Shown here piece by piece: positions 8,865-50,872 of a stretch of 64,000 nucleotides of DNA. The notes below the pieces were generated by a model. It did no database searches. It had not been told where the DNA came from and saw only the letters and a list, made by a program, of their open reading frames with translations. The stretch is from positions 62,001-126,000 of the IMG/VR virus record IMGVR_UViG_3300001782_000005; one strand, 5' to 3'. Each line of letters starts with the position of its first letter. Position 1 is the stretch's first letter. Both the position numbers and the translations under genes were made by a program.

Positions 8865-8942
8865 TGGTCGGGTAGGACAGATTTGAACTGCCGACCCCCT
8901 GCTCCCAAGGCAGGTGCGCTAACCAGACTACGCTACTACCCG
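8865..8942 (-). tRNA. tRNA-Pro(UGG)
   Basis: Cloverleaf; anticodon arm CCTGC-CTTGGGA-GCAGG; TTCAAAT T-loop; encoded CCA. Confidence 0.95.
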
Positions 8943-9651: not shown

Positions 9652-10036
9652 GTGGATTCTCCCTCATAGGTCTTATATTATGTCTCCTCATAAGTTCAAT
9701 AATAAATTCCGATAATTCCGTTTCAATCATATCATCAAATACTTCAATACCACAACCAAGGTTTGCTTTTAGCAACCTAACAAATAAAGAAACTAAATCA
9801 ACCGGGTGAACATCATCCTCGATTCTTCCATTTTTATCTTTAACAATACTAATCTGTCCATCCTTAGATATTAGCATCACATCAACAAACTCAACAGCAT
9901 CTACCATTCCATATATACTAAGTATATTCAAAAATAATTCCCTAGGAGTAAGTTCCTGTGGGATCTCTCCCTTTGAATCTCTAACCCTATGCCTTAAACT
10001 AGGAAATTCAGATAAAATACCTTCCGTCGAAACCAT
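9629..10036 (-). CDS. paralog of 9199..9651
   Basis: Similar C-termini GCGIEVFDDMIETELSEFIIELMRRHNI vs GLNVGFFEDAVTKEIREAIVEVLLRHRV. Confidence 0.45.
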   Translation of the reverse strand: MVSTEGILSEFPSLRHRVRDSKGEIPQELTPRELFLNILSIYGMVDAVEFVDVMLISKDGQISIVKDKNGRIEDDVHPVDLVSLFVRLLKANLGCGIEVFDDMIETELSEFIIELMRRHNIRPMRENPHGKKENL

Positions 10037-10859
10037 TCTCTACTCCTTTATAATTCATTGCAATTGCTTCAGATGTATGAATAGATTCTTCATGTGTACA
10101 TTTCACAATCCAATCATAAATATCTTCCCTCTTATTTAACTCATTTGAAATTGCTCTAATCGCATCCTCAACGAACATTGGATTACTTGCGGCAATCCTA
10201 GCAATTTCCTGTTCATCCACTCGTTTAATAACTGGGTAAGGTAGAGTAAGAACAGCTTTTTCAATTGTCTCAATTATATCTTCTAACCAAACGTAATTTG
10301 GTTCTATTGTCTCAATTAATACGTCAGCAAATGATCTTTGAGCATGAGGATAACCAAGTGAATCTTTGTCACCTAAATCTGAACATAACTCTGCTGAGCA
10401 TGGGCAATAAGATGAATATTGAACTCTAATACCTTGAAAAAATCTAAATTCTCCGTTATTCAATTGTCCCTCAAACTTACAATTATAATAAATAGGAAAT
10501 TCATTGTCCGATACTGGAGATTTTCTCAAAACTGGAAGTTTAAACTCAAACTTCATAAAACTAGAAGTTGACCCAATATTATCTTTTAGATTTATAAGAA
10601 TCTCATTGATTAGAAAATGTTTCAACGGTCGCCTCAAGTATGGCTTTAGCGTAAGCAGGAGTCGAGACATTGATATCCCTCTGGTATTATCCTCTAGGTC
10701 GGTTCTCATTGAGACTTTTGCAACCATCTCACGGAACCCTCCAAATTTTGATTCAAGCATGAAGGGAACTTCAACGTTCTCGACTCCCACTTGATAAATT
10801 GGTATTTTAATTGCTGGTTCTGTACATTGAATATCCGGTAACTCACAAGTTTTATCCAA
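10008..10859 (-). CDS. folE2: GTP cyclohydrolase IB (FolE2)
   Basis: LPDIQ, RGISMSR, CPCS, HAQRS, KRVDE, NPMFVED, EESIH motifs. Confidence 0.92.
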   Translation of the reverse strand: MDKTCELPDIQCTEPAIKIPIYQVGVENVEVPFMLESKFGGFREMVAKVSMRTDLEDNTRGISMSRLLLTLKPYLRRPLKHFLINEILINLKDNIGSTSSFMKFEFKLPVLRKSPVSDNEFPIYYNCKFEGQLNNGEFRFFQGIRVQYSSYCPCSAELCSDLGDKDSLGYPHAQRSFADVLIETIEPNYVWLEDIIETIEKAVLTLPYPVIKRVDEQEIARIAASNPMFVEDAIRAISNELNKREDIYDWIVKCTHEESIHTSEAIAMNYKGVENGFDGRYFI

Positions 10860-10860
10860 T

Positions 10861-11751
10861 TTACCCTCCTGCTACATAGCTGCCAATTCTTTTTCGAAGA
10901 ACTTTTGGAACTTCTTTATACTTTTTAAACTGGCCAATTACTTCATTCATGTCACTGATATATGACCAAACCCTCGGACTATGATCCATATTATAAACAA
11001 GTTCTCCGTACCTTTTCTCACCGTGAAGGAGTTTCTCTGTATCCTCTTCATCAGTTTTTCCTGACTCAAGAAGACTATTGATAAATTTTGTTTGGGTGTT
11101 AATTGTTCTCTTATGACCTTCAATTACTTGGTGTATATCAGTTAGAATACAATTCTCATATCTATCATCATACGGTTTTCCATTCTTATGATGAACCTGA
11201 GTTCCGGTACCCTTTCCGTTTCTAAATATCCAATCAAGATTATGCTTAAAATTGAAGATTAGCATAAATCTTGAAATTAATAAAGTTCCATATGGAGTCT
11301 CAGTCCCAGGAGGGAAATCTCTCCTTGTGTCAATACATTGTATTTTTCCCCCCGCAGTTCTTACTTTAAATCTACATATATCAATACAATCTGGAACTGG
11401 AGGAATTTTGCCAAGTGCACAAGTCGGACATTTGTCTGGAAACTGTATATACCAGTAGAAGAGTCCTTCTAAAATACAGTCAACATAAGGAAGGATATTA
11501 TAACTATCTTCTTTCCGAGGTTTCTTATATAGATCAAGAGGATGCTCCCAATCTAACCACACTTCTTTTGGTAATACTTTAAAACCTAAGCAAAACCGAC
11601 ACTTTTTATTACTAGGATCTACTCCTTTTCCGTCACATATATAACACTCGATAAAACCAAAAGACCTTGGTTCTGCCTGGATAAGAGGAAGATGTTTCTG
11701 TATATTAGAAGACCTTAACTTTTCCTGAGCATCTTGTAGCGCTATATTCAT
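10861..11751 (-). CDS. Zn-finger plus HNH endonuclease-like protein
   Basis: CxxCxGxG repeats; VHHKNGKPYDDRYENC HNH-like motif. Confidence 0.6.
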   Translation of the reverse strand: MNIALQDAQEKLRSSNIQKHLPLIQAEPRSFGFIECYICDGKGVDPSNKKCRFCLGFKVLPKEVWLDWEHPLDLYKKPRKEDSYNILPYVDCILEGLFYWYIQFPDKCPTCALGKIPPVPDCIDICRFKVRTAGGKIQCIDTRRDFPPGTETPYGTLLISRFMLIFNFKHNLDWIFRNGKGTGTQVHHKNGKPYDDRYENCILTDIHQVIEGHKRTINTQTKFINSLLESGKTDEEDTEKLLHGEKRYGELVYNMDHSPRVWSYISDMNEVIGQFKKYKEVPKVLRKRIGSYVAGG

Positions 11752-11954
11752 TTTTCAGTTCCCTCCCTCTTCATTGGTACCAGCCCAAGTCCTTCACATT
11801 TAGTACATCTATCAGATTCTTCCTTCAAAGAACTTCCATAACCATTACAATGGTCACATTGAGTAAATCCAAATCTTTCGGGATCAATCATTAATTTAAA
11901 TGGAGATGGTTTACTCATAACAATTTCTCCTTTCCTTTCCTTATTCTCTCCCAT
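11748..11954 (-). CDS. small DnaJ-type zinc-finger protein
   Basis: CDHCNGYG...CTKCEGLG. Confidence 0.55.
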   Translation of the reverse strand: MGENKERKGEIVMSKPSPFKLMIDPERFGFTQCDHCNGYGSSLKEESDRCTKCEGLGLVPMKREGTEK

Positions 11955-12157: not shown

Positions 12158-12211
12158 TTGACTCCTAAATTATTGATTTTGTTGAGTATTCTAAATTTTA
12201 AAATTTGAAAT

Positions 12212-12509
12212 AAAAGGAGGGCTCCAAATAGCAGCCGGAAGTGTTGGTTTGCCTGAGAGAAGGCAACACTTGTTGACCCGGATTTTTCATACCCTTTAAT
12301 CTTGTTGACTTGAATCTTAAGGGGCCCATGGTATTTACCCTCGGTGGGAGCCGAGTTAGTCTTGACTATCTACCTCCTCTAATAGGACCGGTAGACTGAG
12401 TCTTGAATCTTGAAAGGTCTATTTATCAGCTCCTATGCTGGTGCCTAAATAACGTTTTAGACAAACGCTCTCATACTACCTAGATTACGCCACCGAAGCC
12501 CAACTCCTT
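12212..12509 (-). ncRNA. candidate ~300-nt structured ncRNA
   Basis: Ends pair (AAGGAG/CTCCTT and GGGCTTC/GGAGCCC); internal stems CTACC/GGTAG, CTCGG/CCGAG, AAGTGTTG/CAACACTT; six CAAG motifs; U-tract after the closing stem. Confidence 0.7.
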
Positions 12510-13058
12510 TTAATCCAGTAATGGGGTTGTAGCATTAATGACCTCTAGACGTGCACTAATATTGTCGAAGAGATCATTCCAAACTCTTAGTTGTTTATTT
12601 TTCTCCTTTTCATCATACATATGCTCAACTCGTAGGGTTTCTCCAGCTGCAACATGAGCTCCTCTCATGCCCATCTGACCCAATCTAGTTTGAGCATAAT
12701 TTATATTTAGTGCTTCATAGGTTCCTGTAATGAGATTCTTCATAGATCTGTCAAGAAATAGAAGATCACTAATTGTATATTCTACTCCCTGGATCTCTAC
12801 AATTGTTTGTAAATTTGTTCTTTCAATTCTATTTTTTAACTTGAGGGCCTCCTTATGGAGATCAATATTGGATTGGATAAGCGCTTGTACCTCTTTCTTC
12901 TGAGACTTTTCATCTCCAAAAAGGGGTCGTTCATTTGAAACAATAGAGGCATATTGATTAATACTTCGAATATTGCTTTCCATCCTCTTCTGAATAACTC
13001 CTAATCTTTTTAACCCCTCAACTATCATCATTGGTCTCTCTTCTTGTTTTTCCGTCAT
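12510..13058 (-). CDS. DIP1984-like coiled-coil protein
   Basis: IVEGLKRL..IQKR...IERTNLQT...TISDLL...ISARLEVINATT pattern; likely start MMIVE. Confidence 0.6.
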   Translation of the reverse strand: MTEKQEERPMMIVEGLKRLGVIQKRMESNIRSINQYASIVSNERPLFGDEKSQKKEVQALIQSNIDLHKEALKLKNRIERTNLQTIVEIQGVEYTISDLLFLDRSMKNLITGTYEALNINYAQTRLGQMGMRGAHVAAGETLRVEHMYDEKEKNKQLRVWNDLFDNISARLEVINATTPLLD

Positions 13059-13512
13059 CCTTCCCTCCGATCTGCTTGCTTTTATATTTGGTCCCGAACT
13101 TCTCCTCCCAGTAGTCCAAACCCTTACAAATCATCCCCCACAAAAAGGTTTTATTTGTTGGTATACCATTCCTCATGAATTGGCGTTCGAGTTGCTCAAG
13201 GTATTCATCCCTAACATAGTTAACTTCACAAGTTGGACAATGAATTACTTTAACAGCTTTGAGAGTCATCGTCCCTTCAATAACAGGCACATCAATGGAC
13301 CTTCTTCGTGCTTCATGTGGTCCCCCAGGACATTGACATTTTTTAACTGTTAATTTTACCTTTTCTCCCTTCTCAAATACCTTTAAGAATGGACTTTCAC
13401 ACTCATGGTCATGAACATAAAGAGATATCTCGCCTTTTACATGGTTGATTGTTGCATCAGTAATAAATAAGTCTTCACCACAATTACATTTCACCTTATA
13501 TTCAATTTTCAT
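13018..13512 (-). CDS. zinc-ribbon protein (YgiT/MqsA-type finger)
   Basis: CNCG...HDHEC and CQC...VIHCPTCEVNY. Confidence 0.55.
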   Translation of the reverse strand: MKIEYKVKCNCGEDLFITDATINHVKGEISLYVHDHECESPFLKVFEKGEKVKLTVKKCQCPGGPHEARRRSIDVPVIEGTMTLKAVKVIHCPTCEVNYVRDEYLEQLERQFMRNGIPTNKTFLWGMICKGLDYWEEKFGTKYKSKQIGGKDDGKTRRETNDDS

Positions 13513-13524
13513 TAATTTCTCCTA

Positions 13525-14508
13525 TGATTCACTAGAGAATGCTGGATTACTTTTTTTGCCTTGGTTCACTTTTTATAATAGGTTTCTAGGCTACAGAGGT
13601 TCACTAATTGGGGTTGGTTTTAGTAACACCCCCGGTTCACTATATATTGCTGGTTTTTTGGTTGTGTGTGCTGGTTCACTCTACATCTGTGGACTTCTAT
13701 CTGCAGTTGGTTCACTACTACCACACGGTTTTCTTAATTTTGTTGGTTCACTTGGCACTGTAGGTTAACTGCGGTCGTCTGGTTCACTTTGGTCGTATGG
13801 TCTCCTGGGACATCACGGTTCACTAATTTATACTGGATTCTTCTATGTCATGGTTCACTGTTTTACAATGGGTTCCTTTCATCGAAAGGTTCACTAATCA
13901 GTGGTGATTAATTTTCGTGCCTCAGGTCCACTATTATCATCTGGTTTTCTCACCCCGACGTGGTTCACTTTCGTTTTTTGAATACTGATGTCTTCTGGTT
14001 CACTACCTTAACCTGGTTTTCTTTGGGCCCCTTTGGTTCACTTATACTACTGGTTTACTATACTACATTGGTTCACTCCACTCAGGTGGTTTACTGCAGG
14101 CATGTGGTTCACTCCTCAACATCGAATCCTTAGTCTATACTGGTTCACTTTGCCCGTCAGAATTTTTACATCGAGTTGGTTCACTGCGTTGCGATGGGTT
14201 ACTCCACCAATCTGGTTCACTTAAGAGTAGTGGTTTCTAATCAGTAGTGGTTCACTCTCTATTGTTGAGTTTTTTAACATATTCTGGTACACTCGTTTAA
14301 ACTGATTTCTTTGCCTTCCTGGTTCACTATTGGGTCCTGAGTATTTTTGCGTCTGGTTCACTTCCTCCGCCTAGGGTTAGTGGATAGCATTGGTTCACTC
14401 GGCATCGTTGGAATAATCTAAGATACTGGTTCACTAAAACTGACTGGTTTTTCTTTTCAAAGTTGGTTCACTCCCGATATTTGGTTTACTGTTATGGGCT
14501 GGTCCACT
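13525..14508 (-). repeat. TIGR-type tandem interspaced guide RNA array: 27 units of ~36 nt with two repeats and two ~9-nt spacers per unit
   Basis: GGTTCACT (3 variant forms) at 28 positions from 13526 to 14501, spacing 34-39 nt (mean ~36). On the minus strand: edge AGTGAACCA, degenerate loop repeat ~AGWAAACCA, unique spacers. Confidence 0.88.
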
Positions 14509-14779: not shown

Positions 14780-14859
14780 TGGGGTGTCGGGTGGGAATCG
14801 AACCCACGCTCAACAGGGGCCACAACCCTGCGCCCTTATCCAATTCGGGCCACCGACAC
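14780..14859 (-). tRNA. tRNA-His(GUG)
   Basis: Acceptor GTGTCGG/CCGACAC, C73, CCA; anticodon arm CAGGG-TTGTGGC-CCCTG. Confidence 0.93.
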
Positions 14860-16661: not shown

Positions 16662-16736
16662 TGGACACTACGCCTGGATTCGAACCAGGGATCACGGATT
16701 TGCAATCCGTTGCCTTAACCTCTTGGCCACGTAGTG
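16662..16736 (-). tRNA. tRNA-Cys(GCA)
   Basis: Acceptor CACTACG/CGTAGTG, U73, CCA; ACGGA-TTGCAAA-TCCGT. Confidence 0.95.
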
Positions 16737-16740
16737 TATT

Positions 16741-16817
16741 TGGCACGCACGGAGGGACTCGAACCCCCAACCGCAGGTTTTGGAGACCTGTGCTCTTCGC
16801 AATTGAGCTACGTGCGC
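16741..16817 (-). tRNA. tRNA-Trp(CCA)
   Basis: CAGGT-CTCCAAA-ACCTG; TTCGAGT T-loop; CCA end. Confidence 0.93.
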
Positions 16818-50796: not shown

Positions 50797-50872
50797 TGCA
50801 CCCAGGTGATTAACCTCAACGGACCGCTAAAAAATGCAGCCCTCCCAAGCGACTTACATGCTCAAGTCTACA

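What the first reader, a model, noticed from the sequence alone, without database searches (positions are those of the whole stretch)
12212..13058. DIP1984-like gene immediately followed by a ~300-nt structured RNA with repeated CAAG motifs
Seen: directly after the stop codon, AAGGAG-TT-GGGCTTC can pair with GGAGCCC-TCCTT ~290 nt later, followed by a U-tract. Inside are GC-rich hairpins (CTACC/GGTAG, CTCGG/CCGAG, AAGTGTTG-GCCT/AGGC-CAACACTT). Six CAAG motifs occur (plus-strand CTTG at 12269, 12301, 12309, 12361, 12402, 12409), including GTCAACAAG twice and AAGATTCAAG twice. Inference: a protein-RNA module in which an oligomeric coiled-coil protein binds the iterated motifs (RNP scaffold or type III TA-like logic). 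It lies ~0.5 kb downstream of the guide array on the same strand and may share its transcript.
Basis: partly seen in the sequence, partly recalled or inferred. Interest (0 to 1): 0.7.

Follow-up and report, generated by a model that had tools for sequence, protein, structure and literature searches.

The report
Phage protein gene with partner RNA
A jumbo phage from marine sediment encodes a small helical protein of the uncharacterised DIP1984 family, followed at once by a 298-nt, elaborately folded RNA absent from Rfam 15; the pair recurs across dozens of phages, and bacterial DIP1984 genes carry a structured RNA of their own, which points to an undescribed protein-RNA particle.

Summary
Window 12212..12509 (-) is a real 298-nt structured RNA.

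- **Conservation:** 75 of 82 distinct homologous loci carry it on the same strand. It starts a median of 12 nt after the stop codon of the 182-aa gene.
- **Structure:** Sixty non-redundant copies show strong covariation. They share a closing helix P1, two H-type pseudoknots, a 3' hairpin domain, and two blocks of about four single-stranded heptads (U-N-A-A-G-N-N, 7-nt period).
- **Linkage:** The protein gene is the only conserved neighbour. An RNA-first scan found the RNA only next to that gene.
- **tRNA context:** tRNA genes often follow within 7-19 nt. Distant variants enclose a tRNA.
- **Protein:** It is a remote DIP1984/DUF6847 homologue (3KDQ, Z 12.4; hhalign E 2.4e-6).
- **Bacterial parallel:** True DIP1984 genes in sampled bacteria (Bacillota, plus one genome of another phylum) are also followed by a covarying, pseudoknotted RNA.
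- **Prior knowledge:** No Rfam family and no paper I found describes either RNA.

The best reading is a dedicated protein-RNA particle whose protein may bind the heptads cooperatively. Binding, transcription and function are untested. The link to the upstream 36-nt array and the toxin-antitoxin reading are not supported.

The parts
12510..13058 (-). 182-aa helical protein, a remote member of the DIP1984/DUF6847 superfamily. Strong GGAGG ribosome-binding site before the ATG at 13058.
   Evidence: ORF. AF2 pLDDT 89. 3KDQ is the only full-length fold match, Z 12.4 (Foldseek E 6e-3). 25 of 42 relatives give weak hits to NF038048 and 21 of 42 to PF20935. hhalign against Bacillota DIP1984: probability 88.9%, E 2.4e-6.
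12212..12509 (-). The whole structured RNA, 298 nt, from the first base of P1 to the U-run after P1.
12488..12509 (-). 5' strand of P1. The core is GGGCUUCGGUGGCG, with a clade-specific AAGGAG extension.
   Evidence: P1 is 92% paired over 60 sequences, with up to 6 pair types per position. 17 of 25 alifold pairs show compensatory changes.
12469..12487 (-). Conserved junction after P1. The family consensus is G-UAAA, about 6 nt, then GAAA.
   Evidence: Invariant G and A columns.
12442..12468 (-). Pseudoknot PK1. A short stem whose loop pairs with the segment just downstream.
   Evidence: Own loop against own downstream segment scores 5.66, against 3.93 for cross-pairings. 44 distinct helix sequences.
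12427..12440 (-). Small hairpin in the variable region. In 35 of 60 relatives this region holds a hairpin with a 7-nt CU-NNN-AA loop.
12396..12415 (-). Heptads H1-H3 (UCAAGAU, UCAAGAC, and a degenerate UCAG).
12369..12395 (-). Hairpin inserted between H3 and H4 (CUACC/GGUAG). Found only in the window's clade.
12355..12368 (-). Heptad H4 plus the conserved UAAC that leads into PK2.
12325..12355 (-). Pseudoknot PK2. Stem 1 is CUCGG/CCGAG. The loop CCCA pairs with the downstream UGGG across an A-rich GUAAAUA linker.
   Evidence: Stem 1 shows CG/GC 42:16 and AU/UA 30:22. Stem 2 forms in 60 of 60 sequences with 40 distinct helices.
12293..12321 (-). Heptads H5-H8 (UUAAG, UCAAG, ACAAG, UAAAG).
12282..12292 (-). 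Conserved A-rich junction GAAAAAU, placed before the 3' hairpin.
   Evidence: Invariant A, A and C columns.
12235..12281 (-). 3' hairpin domain. P8 is CCGG/CCGG, P9 is AAGUGUUG/CAACACUU, and the apical stem is GCC/GGC.
   Evidence: Covariance model R1: 97.9% of cells paired against 84.2% shuffled, 85 double-change cells against 22.9, and 0 of 500 shuffles as high.
12214..12234 (-). Invariant GCUG, then the 3' strand of P1.
12205..12213 (-). U-rich tail after P1. In 18 of 60 relatives a tRNA gene starts 7-19 nt after P1 instead.

Best explanation
Window 12212..13058 (-) is a self-contained two-part module: a small helical DIP1984-superfamily protein plus its own 298-nt structured non-coding RNA, encoded 12 nt after the stop codon and so made from the same transcript.

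The RNA is closed by a long helix P1. It contains two H-type pseudoknots and a conserved 3' hairpin domain. It also presents two single-stranded blocks of about four heptads (U-N-A-A-G-N-N, 7-nt period), one on each side of pseudoknot PK2.

I propose that the protein binds this RNA to form a stable particle. Several protein copies would line up cooperatively on the heptads, with the pseudoknots acting as fixed structural anchors. This resembles the way TRAP and HutP read spaced NAG triplets, and the way T4 gp32 nucleates at a pseudoknot next to a single-stranded operator.

The 3' end would be set either by P1 plus a U-run or by RNase P cleavage at the following tRNA. Because the module sits in phage tRNA islands and distant versions enclose a whole tRNA, the particle probably acts on tRNA or translation.

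Shown: the RNA, its fold, and its strict linkage to the gene. Inferred: co-transcription, protein binding, the heptads as the binding site, and the tRNA-related role.
For: 1. The RNA is real.
- A profile finds it on the same strand just after the gene in 75 of 82 distinct loci that have at least 400 nt downstream.
- There is strong covariation in P1, PK2 stem 1, P8 and P9.
- Both pseudoknots are supported against cross-pairing controls.

2. The linkage is tight.
- The distance from the stop codon to P1 has a median of 12 nt.
- Among 549 flanking ORFs in 60 loci, the DIP1984-like gene is the only family present in more than 8 loci.
- A pattern scan of viral contigs for the RNA's 3' core gave 11 true RNAs. 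Ten have the gene directly upstream. The eleventh is cut by the locus end, but it lies on a contig already known to hold the gene.
- The 277-kb genome holds one copy of the gene and one of the RNA.

3. The heptads are conserved and periodic.
- There are on average 7.3 U.A.G motifs per RNA in the two blocks, against 1.35 after shuffling.
- 196 of 316 spacings are exactly 7 nt.
- U, A and G were required by the search pattern; the second A is 82% and C is the commonest second base.

4. The same arrangement exists in cells.
- Bona fide DIP1984 genes occur in 15 of 301 sampled Bacillota genomes. In at least one genome of another phylum (L188; a second, L189, is less clear) the gene is followed by the same kind of RNA.
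- These genes are followed by a conserved ORF-free region of about 220 nt.
- That region has a covarying long-range helix (7 different helix sequences in 13 loci) and a covarying pseudoknot.
- Their neighbouring genes are unrelated.

5. There is a tRNA context.
- 38 of 60 loci have same-strand tRNAs within 2.5 kb, and 18 of 60 have one 7-19 nt after P1.
- Distant variants in L024, L025 and L027 enclose a tRNA inside P1.
Against: - No binding evidence exists. The complex prediction with RNA was not folded.
- No RNA-seq run holding this sequence was listed, so transcription is unverified.
- The protein is not detectably similar to any known RNA-binding fold. Apart from 3KDQ it matches only generic helical hairpins.
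- The bacterial RNAs lack obvious heptads, so the heptads may serve something other than binding the shared protein.
- Homology between the phage RNA and the bacterial RNA is not demonstrated. The hits at the expected position reach only E 1-7.
- One close homologue (L044) lacks the RNA and has other repeated hairpins instead.
Confidence: 0.6

Rival explanations
1. The RNA works without the adjacent protein. It would be another ornate phage RNA of tRNA islands, like GOLLD and ROOL, perhaps self-assembling or carrying tRNAs. On this reading the gene merely travels with it as part of one mobile cassette.
For: - It is phage-encoded, lies in tRNA islands, has multiple pseudoknots, and sometimes has tRNAs embedded.
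- These traits are reported for GOLLD and ROOL, for which no protein partners are known (PMC12286853, read).
Against: - Gene and RNA are separated by a median of only 12 nt.
- The RNA was not found apart from the gene in the one RNA-first scan I ran. The gene, at 38% identity or more, lacks the RNA in only one locus, L044.
- Bacterial DIP1984 genes outside any tRNA island keep a 3' structured RNA too.
- There is no Rfam match to GOLLD, ROOL or any other family, even at E up to 10.
Confidence: 0.15
2. The RNA is a cis-acting 3' untranslated element of the DIP1984-like mRNA. It would act as a stabiliser, a terminator, or an autoregulatory operator bound by the protein to limit its own synthesis, with no function in trans.
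For: - It lies immediately 3' of the ORF on the same strand.
- P1 is followed by a U-run in the window and in many relatives, and the bacterial versions are followed by terminator-like hairpins.
- No minus-strand promoter-like site lies between the gene and the RNA.
Against: - About 300 nt with two pseudoknots, eight periodic repeats and invariant junctions is far more than stabilisation or termination needs.
- In 18 of 60 loci a tRNA follows within 7-19 nt, so transcription must read through. P1 there is not a terminator.
- The terminator scan found nothing on the minus strand.
- Distant variants enclose a tRNA.
Confidence: 0.12
3. The module is a toxin-antitoxin-like pair. The helical protein, whose relatives are annotated 'septicolysin', would be harmful, and the RNA would sequester it, as in type III systems.
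For: - It is a stand-alone two-part module with patchy distribution (15 of 301 sampled Bacillota), variable neighbours, occasional tandem duplicates, and a presence in phages.
- Relatives are reported on Acinetobacter plasmids (papers listed).
Against: - The RNA has no tandem 30-40-nt units and lies downstream of the gene, not upstream.
- The fold is a helical bundle, not a ToxN- or Kid-like endoribonuclease.
- There is no hit in the PADLOC defence library.
- The 'septicolysin' name has no functional support in the papers found.
- It sits within the tRNA islands of large phage genomes (the window's is 277 kb).
Confidence: 0.08
4. The protein binds the conserved core (P1 junction and PK1, the parts that resemble the bacterial RNA). 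The heptads are a phage-specific addition that titrates a host factor, for example an RNA-binding protein or a tRNA-directed nuclease, so that the RNA acts as a sponge or decoy.
For: - Heptads are prominent in the phage RNAs but not in the bacterial ones.
- The phage RNAs carry tRNA-like pieces. There is an anticodon-loop-like CU-NNN-AA hairpin in 35 of 60, and whole tRNAs in distant variants.
- Within one RNA, A-A-G and A-C-G versions of the heptad coexist, so the reader of the motif tolerates A or C at that position.
Against: - No candidate host factor that reads UNAAG at 7-nt spacing is known to me.
- No experiment or computation here addresses it.
- It overlaps with the main explanation rather than excluding it.
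Confidence: 0.15

Closest known systems
GOLLD and ROOL RNAs (large ornate RNAs of phages and prophages)
   Same: They are phage-encoded, often near tRNA islands, and rich in pseudoknots. tRNAs are sometimes embedded in GOLLD (PMC12286853). This RNA likewise sits in tRNA islands, and distant variants enclose a tRNA.
   Different: There is no sequence or structure match in Rfam 15 at any threshold tried. This RNA is about 300 nt, whereas GOLLD often exceeds 800 nt and ROOL is, from my memory, about 580 nt. It has periodic single-stranded heptads. It is always paired with a dedicated protein gene, whereas no protein partner has been identified for ROOL (PMC12286853).
TRAP and HutP RNA recognition (oligomeric proteins reading spaced NAG triplets), from established knowledge
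   Same: These systems use iterated purine-rich triplets at a fixed spacing. HutP reads UAG triplets separated by 4 nt, which gives a 7-nt period, arranged in two blocks. Here AAG recurs with a 7-nt period in two blocks.
   Different: TRAP and HutP are beta-rich ring oligomers that control attenuation in 5' leaders. Here the protein is a helical bundle, the RNA lies 3' of the gene, and binding has not been shown.
T4 gene 32 translational operator (a pseudoknot that nucleates cooperative protein binding on adjacent single-stranded repeats), from established knowledge; mentioned in PMC10690425
   Same: A pseudoknot lies directly next to an unstructured, repeat-containing stretch.
   Different: The gp32 operator lies 5' of its gene and is short, and gp32 is an OB-fold single-stranded-DNA-binding protein. 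This RNA lies 3' of its gene, is closed by P1, and is far more elaborate.
Type III toxin-antitoxin systems (ToxIN and similar)
   Same: A small protein gene is paired with a non-coding RNA that contains repeats and pseudoknots, and the pair occurs on mobile elements.
   Different: In ToxIN the RNA is a tandem array of about 36-nt units upstream of an endoribonuclease toxin. Here there is a single complex RNA downstream of a helical protein.
DIP1984 (PDB 3KDQ), NCBIfam NF038048, Pfam DUF6847
   Same: It is the only full-length fold match (Z 12.4, 151 of 152 residues). There is profile-profile similarity (E 2.4e-6), with shared TN and C-terminal N motifs.
   Different: The window protein itself does not reach either family's HMM threshold. 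The family has no known function, and no association with RNA was found in the literature searches.
tmRNA with SmpB
   Same: It is an RNA of about 300 nt whose ends pair, with several pseudoknots, partnered with a small protein and encoded by some large phages. One distant locus, L022, has a tmRNA gene next to the homologue.
   Different: There is no T-arm, no acceptor or CCA end and no tag reading frame. ARAGORN and Rfam call nothing here.

Membership tests
DIP1984 family (NCBIfam NF038048) / Pfam DUF6847 (PF20935) | The protein scores over the family HMM's curated cut-off. | tested here: not met
   The window protein gives no hit at E <= 0.01 in NCBIfam or for PF20935. Of its 42 relatives, 25 hit NF038048 (best E 2e-6) and 21 hit PF20935 (best 5.9e-5). 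A phage relative on MAG contigs scores only 20.5-20.6 bits against the 70-bit cut-off.
DIP1984 family (NCBIfam NF038048) / Pfam DUF6847 (PF20935) | The same fold as the solved member, 3KDQ. | tested here: met
   AF2 model with pLDDT 89. VIA-align Z 12.4 over 151 of 152 residues, while the next hits at Z 8.4 cover only a helical hairpin. Foldseek E 6e-3, probability 1.00.
DIP1984 family (NCBIfam NF038048) / Pfam DUF6847 (PF20935) | Profile-level homology to bona fide members. | tested here: met
   hhalign of 42 phage proteins against 13 Bacillota DIP1984 proteins: probability 88.9%, E 2.4e-6, 156 aligned columns.
Any described RNA family (Rfam 15, 4227 models, including tRNA, tmRNA, RNase P, GOLLD, ROOL, OLE, raiA) | A covariance-model match at or near the gathering score. 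| tested here: not met
   There is no hit over 12212..12509 at gathering thresholds. At E <= 10 only a 15.5-bit suhB match against a 41-bit gathering score. There are also none for a relative (L018) or for the bacterial RNAs at E <= 1.
Type III toxin-antitoxin | The antitoxin RNA is a tandem array of about 30-40-nt repeats located upstream of the toxin gene. | tested here: not met
   The RNA lies downstream, is a single unit closed by P1, and its repeats are 7 nt.
Type III toxin-antitoxin | The toxin is a ToxN/AbiQ-type endoribonuclease. | tested here: not met
   The fold is helical and matches only 3KDQ. There are no significant PADLOC hits.
tmRNA | A tRNA-like domain (acceptor stem and T-arm) plus a tag-peptide reading frame. 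| tested here: not met
   ARAGORN finds four tRNAs and no tmRNA in the window, and Rfam finds none.
TRAP/HutP-type repeat-reading regulators | RNA with at least 3 NAG triplets at a fixed short spacing. | tested here: met
   AAG-centred heptads, on average 7.3 per RNA, with a 7-nt spacing in 196 of 316 intervals.
TRAP/HutP-type repeat-reading regulators | A ring-shaped beta-rich oligomeric protein that acts on a 5' leader. | tested here: not met
   The protein is a helical bundle and the RNA lies 3' of the gene. The oligomeric state was not testable.
Intrinsic terminator only | A short GC-rich hairpin followed by a U-run, and nothing else conserved. | tested here: not met
   The scan finds no minus-strand terminator. 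About 300 nt are conserved and covary. tRNAs follow within 7-19 nt in 18 of 60 loci.

The most novel reading that the evidence does not exclude
DIP1984/DUF6847 proteins, a family with a solved structure but no known function, are RNA-binding proteins. Each is encoded together with its own cognate structured RNA, and the pair forms a previously unrecognised class of ribonucleoprotein particle found in sampled Bacillota, in a genome of another bacterial phylum, and in jumbo phages. In phages the RNA has gained periodic heptads and tRNA-like modules, and even whole tRNAs. It is built into tRNA islands, which suggests a role in handling or protecting tRNAs or translation during infection.
Probability: 0.45. 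Interest if true: 0.85.

Novelty: categorically new. Interest (0 to 1): 0.82.

Why it matters
**A candidate new RNA class.** Conserved, complex-folded RNAs of unknown function are rare. This one shows strong covariation in P1, PK2 stem 1 and the 3' hairpin, and each pseudoknot's second stem beats cross-pairing controls. It is absent from Rfam 15.

**A built-in lead.** Unlike GOLLD and ROOL, it comes with an obvious candidate partner: one small protein encoded 12 nt upstream. The question of what the RNA does therefore becomes directly testable by co-expression, pull-down and cryo-EM.

**A hypothesis for an orphan protein family.** DIP1984/DUF6847 is a structural-genomics orphan (3KDQ). The profile search found 906 sequence clusters at 50% identity. 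This is the first concrete functional idea for the family.

**A link to phage tRNA islands.** The tight embedding in tRNA islands bears on the open question of why large phages carry tRNA arrays and ornate RNAs next to them.

**An unusual recognition code.** The 7-nt periodic single-stranded repeats flanking a pseudoknot would be worth understanding in their own right.

Tried and rejected
- **Complex prediction.** I submitted two protein copies plus the 298-nt RNA. The tool did not fold it and says it is no evidence either way.
- **Transcription.** Only DNA metagenome runs from marine sediment and seawater hold the sequence, and no RNA run was listed.
- **Rfam.** Nothing was found for the phage RNA or the bacterial RNA, at gathering thresholds or at permissive E-values.
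- **Phage collection.** A blastn of 4 kb around the locus gave no match.
- **Homology between the phage and bacterial RNAs.**
  - nhmmer in both directions, and a covariance model of the 5' domain, gave only non-significant hits.
  - Three of those eleven hits do fall exactly at the expected place (L117, L025, L027).
  - I therefore treat homology as plausible, not shown.
- **tmRNA.** Considered because the ends pair and there are pseudoknots. Rejected because there is no T-arm and no tag frame.
- **RNase P-like P4.** GGAAAAAUCC...CUGGCUG resembles GGAAAGUCC...CCGGCUU. Rejected because the helix encloses only one hairpin and the flanking pairs do not fit, by inspection.
- **Pairing between the two heptad blocks.** Watson-Crick pairing works only for A/U-only copies, so I rejected it (inspection).
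- **Alternative AGCC/GGCU pairing.** Rejected because there is no covariation.
- **Protein-RNA covariation on A-A-G against A-C-G heptads.** Dropped because both forms coexist within single RNAs.
- **Defence-system libraries.** PADLOC gave no significant hit.
- **Literature.** Searches on DIP1984, septicolysin, DUF6847, 3KDQ and large phage RNAs found nothing on function or on this RNA. The catalogue of about 8,500 candidate viral RNAs of 29-151 nt (PMC10690425) could contain a fragment of it, but its supplements are not held.
- **The 43-aa ORF at 12198..12329 (-) inside the RNA.** Dismissed. The conservation pattern is helical covariation with indels, not coding.
Full report
**Setting.** The window is bases 62001-126000 of a 277-kb virus record with direct terminal repeats, a jumbo phage assembled from marine-sediment metagenomes. 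ORFs and the four tRNA genes (Pro, His, Cys, Trp) in the stretches I examined lie on the minus strand. No record in the phage collection resembles the region.

**Checking the observation.**
- On the minus strand, a 182-aa ORF (12510..13058) ends at a TAA.
- Twelve bases later, a 298-nt ORF-poor stretch begins (12212..12509).
- Its two ends pair: AAGGAG-UU-GGGCUUCGGUGGCG pairs with UGCUAUUUGGAGCCC-UCCUU. U's follow.
- The fold is more stable than shuffles, at -93 kcal/mol with z = -2.5.
- The six CTTG positions, the two GTCAACAAG copies and the two AAGATTCAAG copies are exactly as reported. Six CAAG is well above chance (1.3 expected, P about 0.0004).

**Is it conserved?**
- The protein has 47 relatives in the 5.8-billion-protein index.
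- A profile search finds 906 clusters at 50% identity.
- Protein-guided scans fetched 25 viral, 80 metagenomic and 7 MAG loci.
- A DNA profile built from 14 downstream regions finds the same element on the same strand, just after the gene.
- Over all loci, 75 of 82 distinct loci with at least 400 nt downstream carry it.
- The seven exceptions break down as follows:
  - Five are distant homologues at 24-28% identity.
  - One has a partial gene.
  - One (L044) has three copies of a different hairpin element in that place.
  - L097, which first looked negative, does carry the RNA, cut off by the contig end.

**Structure.** Sixty non-redundant copies were aligned.
- **P1.**
  - It is 92% paired, with up to six different pair types at a position.
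  - RNAalifold on 14 sequences found compensatory changes in 17 of 25 pairs.
- **3' hairpin domain.** A covariance model gave these counts:
  - 97.9% of cells paired, against 84.2% in shuffles.
  - 85 double-change cells, against 22.9.
  - 0 of 500 shuffles reached the observed values.
  - All slid controls were far lower.
- **PK2.**
  - The stem of the central hairpin flips CG/GC (42:16) and AU/UA (30:22).
  - Its loop pairs with a segment about 10 nt downstream in all 60 sequences, using 40 different helix sequences. This makes an H-type pseudoknot with an A-rich linker.
- **PK1.** A second pseudoknot of the same design follows the 5' junction.
- **Invariant single-stranded pieces.** These are G-UAAA after P1, GAAAAAUCC before the 3' hairpin, and GCUG between that hairpin and P1.

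**The repeats.**
- The unit is a heptad: U, then C>A>U, then A, then A (82%) or C, then G, then A>U, then C/U.
- There are four copies before PK2 and four after it.
- That is on average 7.3 per RNA in the two blocks, against 1.35 in shuffled blocks.
- 196 of 316 spacings are exactly 7 nt.
- In the window these are H1-H3 (12396-12415), H4 (12355-12368) and H5-H8 (12293-12321). A hairpin found only in the window's clade is inserted between H3 and H4.
- The CAAG at 12269-12272 belongs to helix P9.

**Linkage to the gene and to tRNAs.**
- Among the same-strand ORFs flanking the 60 loci, only the DIP1984-like gene is shared. The next family occurs in 8 loci.
- The distance from the stop codon to P1 has a median of 12 nt.
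- I ran a search that ignored the protein, using a pattern for the 3' core against all viral contigs.
  - It gave 48 hits, of which 11 are the true RNA.
  - Ten of these have the gene directly upstream.
  - The eleventh is cut by the locus end, on a contig known to hold the gene.
- The phage has one gene and one RNA.
- 38 of 60 loci have same-strand tRNAs within 2.5 kb. In 18 of 60, a tRNA begins 7-19 nt after P1. There, transcription must continue through the RNA, and RNase P would define its 3' end (inference).
- The distant homologues in L024, L025 and L027, and probably L022, are followed by a 340-360-nt variant. It has the same P1, 5' junction (GAUAAAAACYG) and 3' core. In the first three loci it also has a whole tRNA inside P1, and in L024 and L027, whose sequences I read, a single run of about ten CAAG-type repeats.
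- 35 of 60 RNAs carry a hairpin whose 7-nt loop reads CU-NNN-AA, the shape of an anticodon loop.

**The protein.**
- Pfam and NCBIfam do not name the window protein. PHROGs gives only a weak match to a family labelled tail fibre.
- The AlphaFold model is confident, at pLDDT 89.
- Its only full-length match among solved structures is 3KDQ, the Corynebacterium diphtheriae protein of unknown function, which I take to be DIP1984, the namesake of the family. Z is 12.4 over 151 of 152 residues, and the next hits at 8.4 cover one helical hairpin.
- AlphaFold DB matches include entries named septicolysin.
- 25 of 42 relatives weakly hit NF038048, and 21 of 42 hit PF20935.
- Profile-profile comparison with true Bacillota DIP1984 proteins gives 88.9% probability and E 2.4e-6, with shared TN and C-terminal Asn motifs.

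**An unexpected extension.** I then asked whether true DIP1984 genes also have such an RNA.
- In 301 sampled Bacillota genomes, 15 carry the family above its cut-off.
- In 13 loci the gene is followed by a conserved ORF-free region of about 220 nt. It has these parts:
  - GGUAGC-UAAA near the start.
  - A long-range helix with seven different covarying sequences, for example AGUACG/CGUACU, AGCGC/GCGCU and GACAUG/CAUGUC.
  - A pseudoknot of the same design as PK1, again covarying.
  - An invariant ACUACC.
  - A 3' GUGAGGGYGGG-NNN-GGGG tail.
- One of two loci from another phylum shows the same element.
- Neighbouring genes are unrelated housekeeping genes.
- Four of 14 copies include a T-arm-like hairpin, against 0.29 expected.
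- Rfam has nothing for these either.
- The phage and bacterial RNAs share short motifs and their order. Model-based searches do not establish homology.

**Interpretation.**
- The shown facts are a covarying, complex RNA, strict adjacency to one protein family, the same arrangement in cells, and a tRNA-island context in phages.
- These are best explained by a dedicated protein-RNA particle.
- Placing the protein on the heptads is an analogy with TRAP, HutP and gp32. It is inference.
- The heptads could instead address a host factor, since the bacterial RNAs lack them.
- The cis-element, RNA-only and toxin-antitoxin readings are weighed in their own sections.
- The 36-nt array upstream is not part of the module. 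It accompanies it only in the window's clade.

**Prior knowledge.** Full-text searches found no functional work on DIP1984, DUF6847 or 3KDQ, and no description of this RNA. GOLLD and ROOL are the nearest described things: phage RNAs near tRNA islands, with tRNAs sometimes inside GOLLD, and no protein partner identified for ROOL (PMC12286853). I could not inspect the supplementary catalogue of PMC10690425.

**Limits.**
- There are no expression data.
- There is no binding evidence.
- The full-length RNA model was not attempted, because I judged it too long to calibrate.
- Actinomycetota and Deinococcus DIP1984 loci were not examined.

Noticed in passing
window 13530..14471 (-); also L004, L005, and L091:3505-4020: An array of about 26 units of about 36 nt. 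Each unit is AGUGAACC(A), then about 10 variable nt, then (A)AAACC(A), then about 9 variable nt. It lies upstream of the module only in the window's clade. An analogous 36-nt array with different boxes (AGCGAGCCA and GAGAAAACCA) lies 160 nt downstream of the RNA in the unrelated locus L091, flanked by promoter-like TTGACA..TATAAT sites and a GC-rich hairpin. Both boxes end in CCA in both arrays. Function unknown.
   Followed up: partly
L117-L130, L188 (bacterial genomes): Bona fide DIP1984 genes of Bacillota, and of one genome of another phylum, are followed by a conserved, covarying, pseudoknotted RNA of about 220 nt that ends in GUGAGGGYGGG-NNN-GGGG. It is not in Rfam.
   Followed up: partly
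L024:3060-3415, L025, L027, L022: Distant homologues of the protein (24-28% identity) are followed by a 340-360-nt variant of the RNA. In three of the four loci it encloses a whole tRNA gene inside the closing helix. Some of the anticodon calls are odd. In L024 and L027, whose sequences I read, there is one long run of CAAG-type repeats (about 8-nt period in L024).
   Followed up: partly
L044:560-1010: One close homologue lacks the RNA. It has instead three copies of a different hairpin element of about 95 nt (GGGGAGGUUACUAAAUAAGCUUACAUG ... UUGACUUACCUCC) and a tRNA.
   Followed up: no
L022:1806-2161: A phage-encoded tmRNA gene (tag ANPDLALQAA) lies directly upstream of a distant DIP1984-like gene.
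   Followed up: no
window 50799..50851 (-): Rfam DUF3800-VI RNA motif, 44 bits against a gathering score of 35.
   Followed up: no
window 10008..10859 (-): A FolE2-type GTP cyclohydrolase I (Pfam E 1e-62). From general knowledge, phage FolE homologues often belong to 7-deazaguanine DNA-modification pathways; I did not test this here.
   Followed up: no
window 8865..8942, 14780..14859, 16662..16736, 16741..16817 (all -): tRNA-Pro(UGG), tRNA-His(GUG), tRNA-Cys(GCA) and tRNA-Trp(CCA). The module sits inside this loose tRNA island.
   Followed up: yes
G019:C35 and G109:C4 (Bacillota): Two DIP1984 genes lie 2 kb apart in the same orientation in each of two genomes, that is, tandem duplicated modules.
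   Followed up: no
window 13018..13512 (-) and 11748..11954 (-): The flanking small ORFs are zinc-ribbon or CxxC proteins. One gives a weak YokU-like hit and the other a DnaJ-type CXXCXGXG hit. They are conserved only in the window's close relatives.
   Followed up: partly
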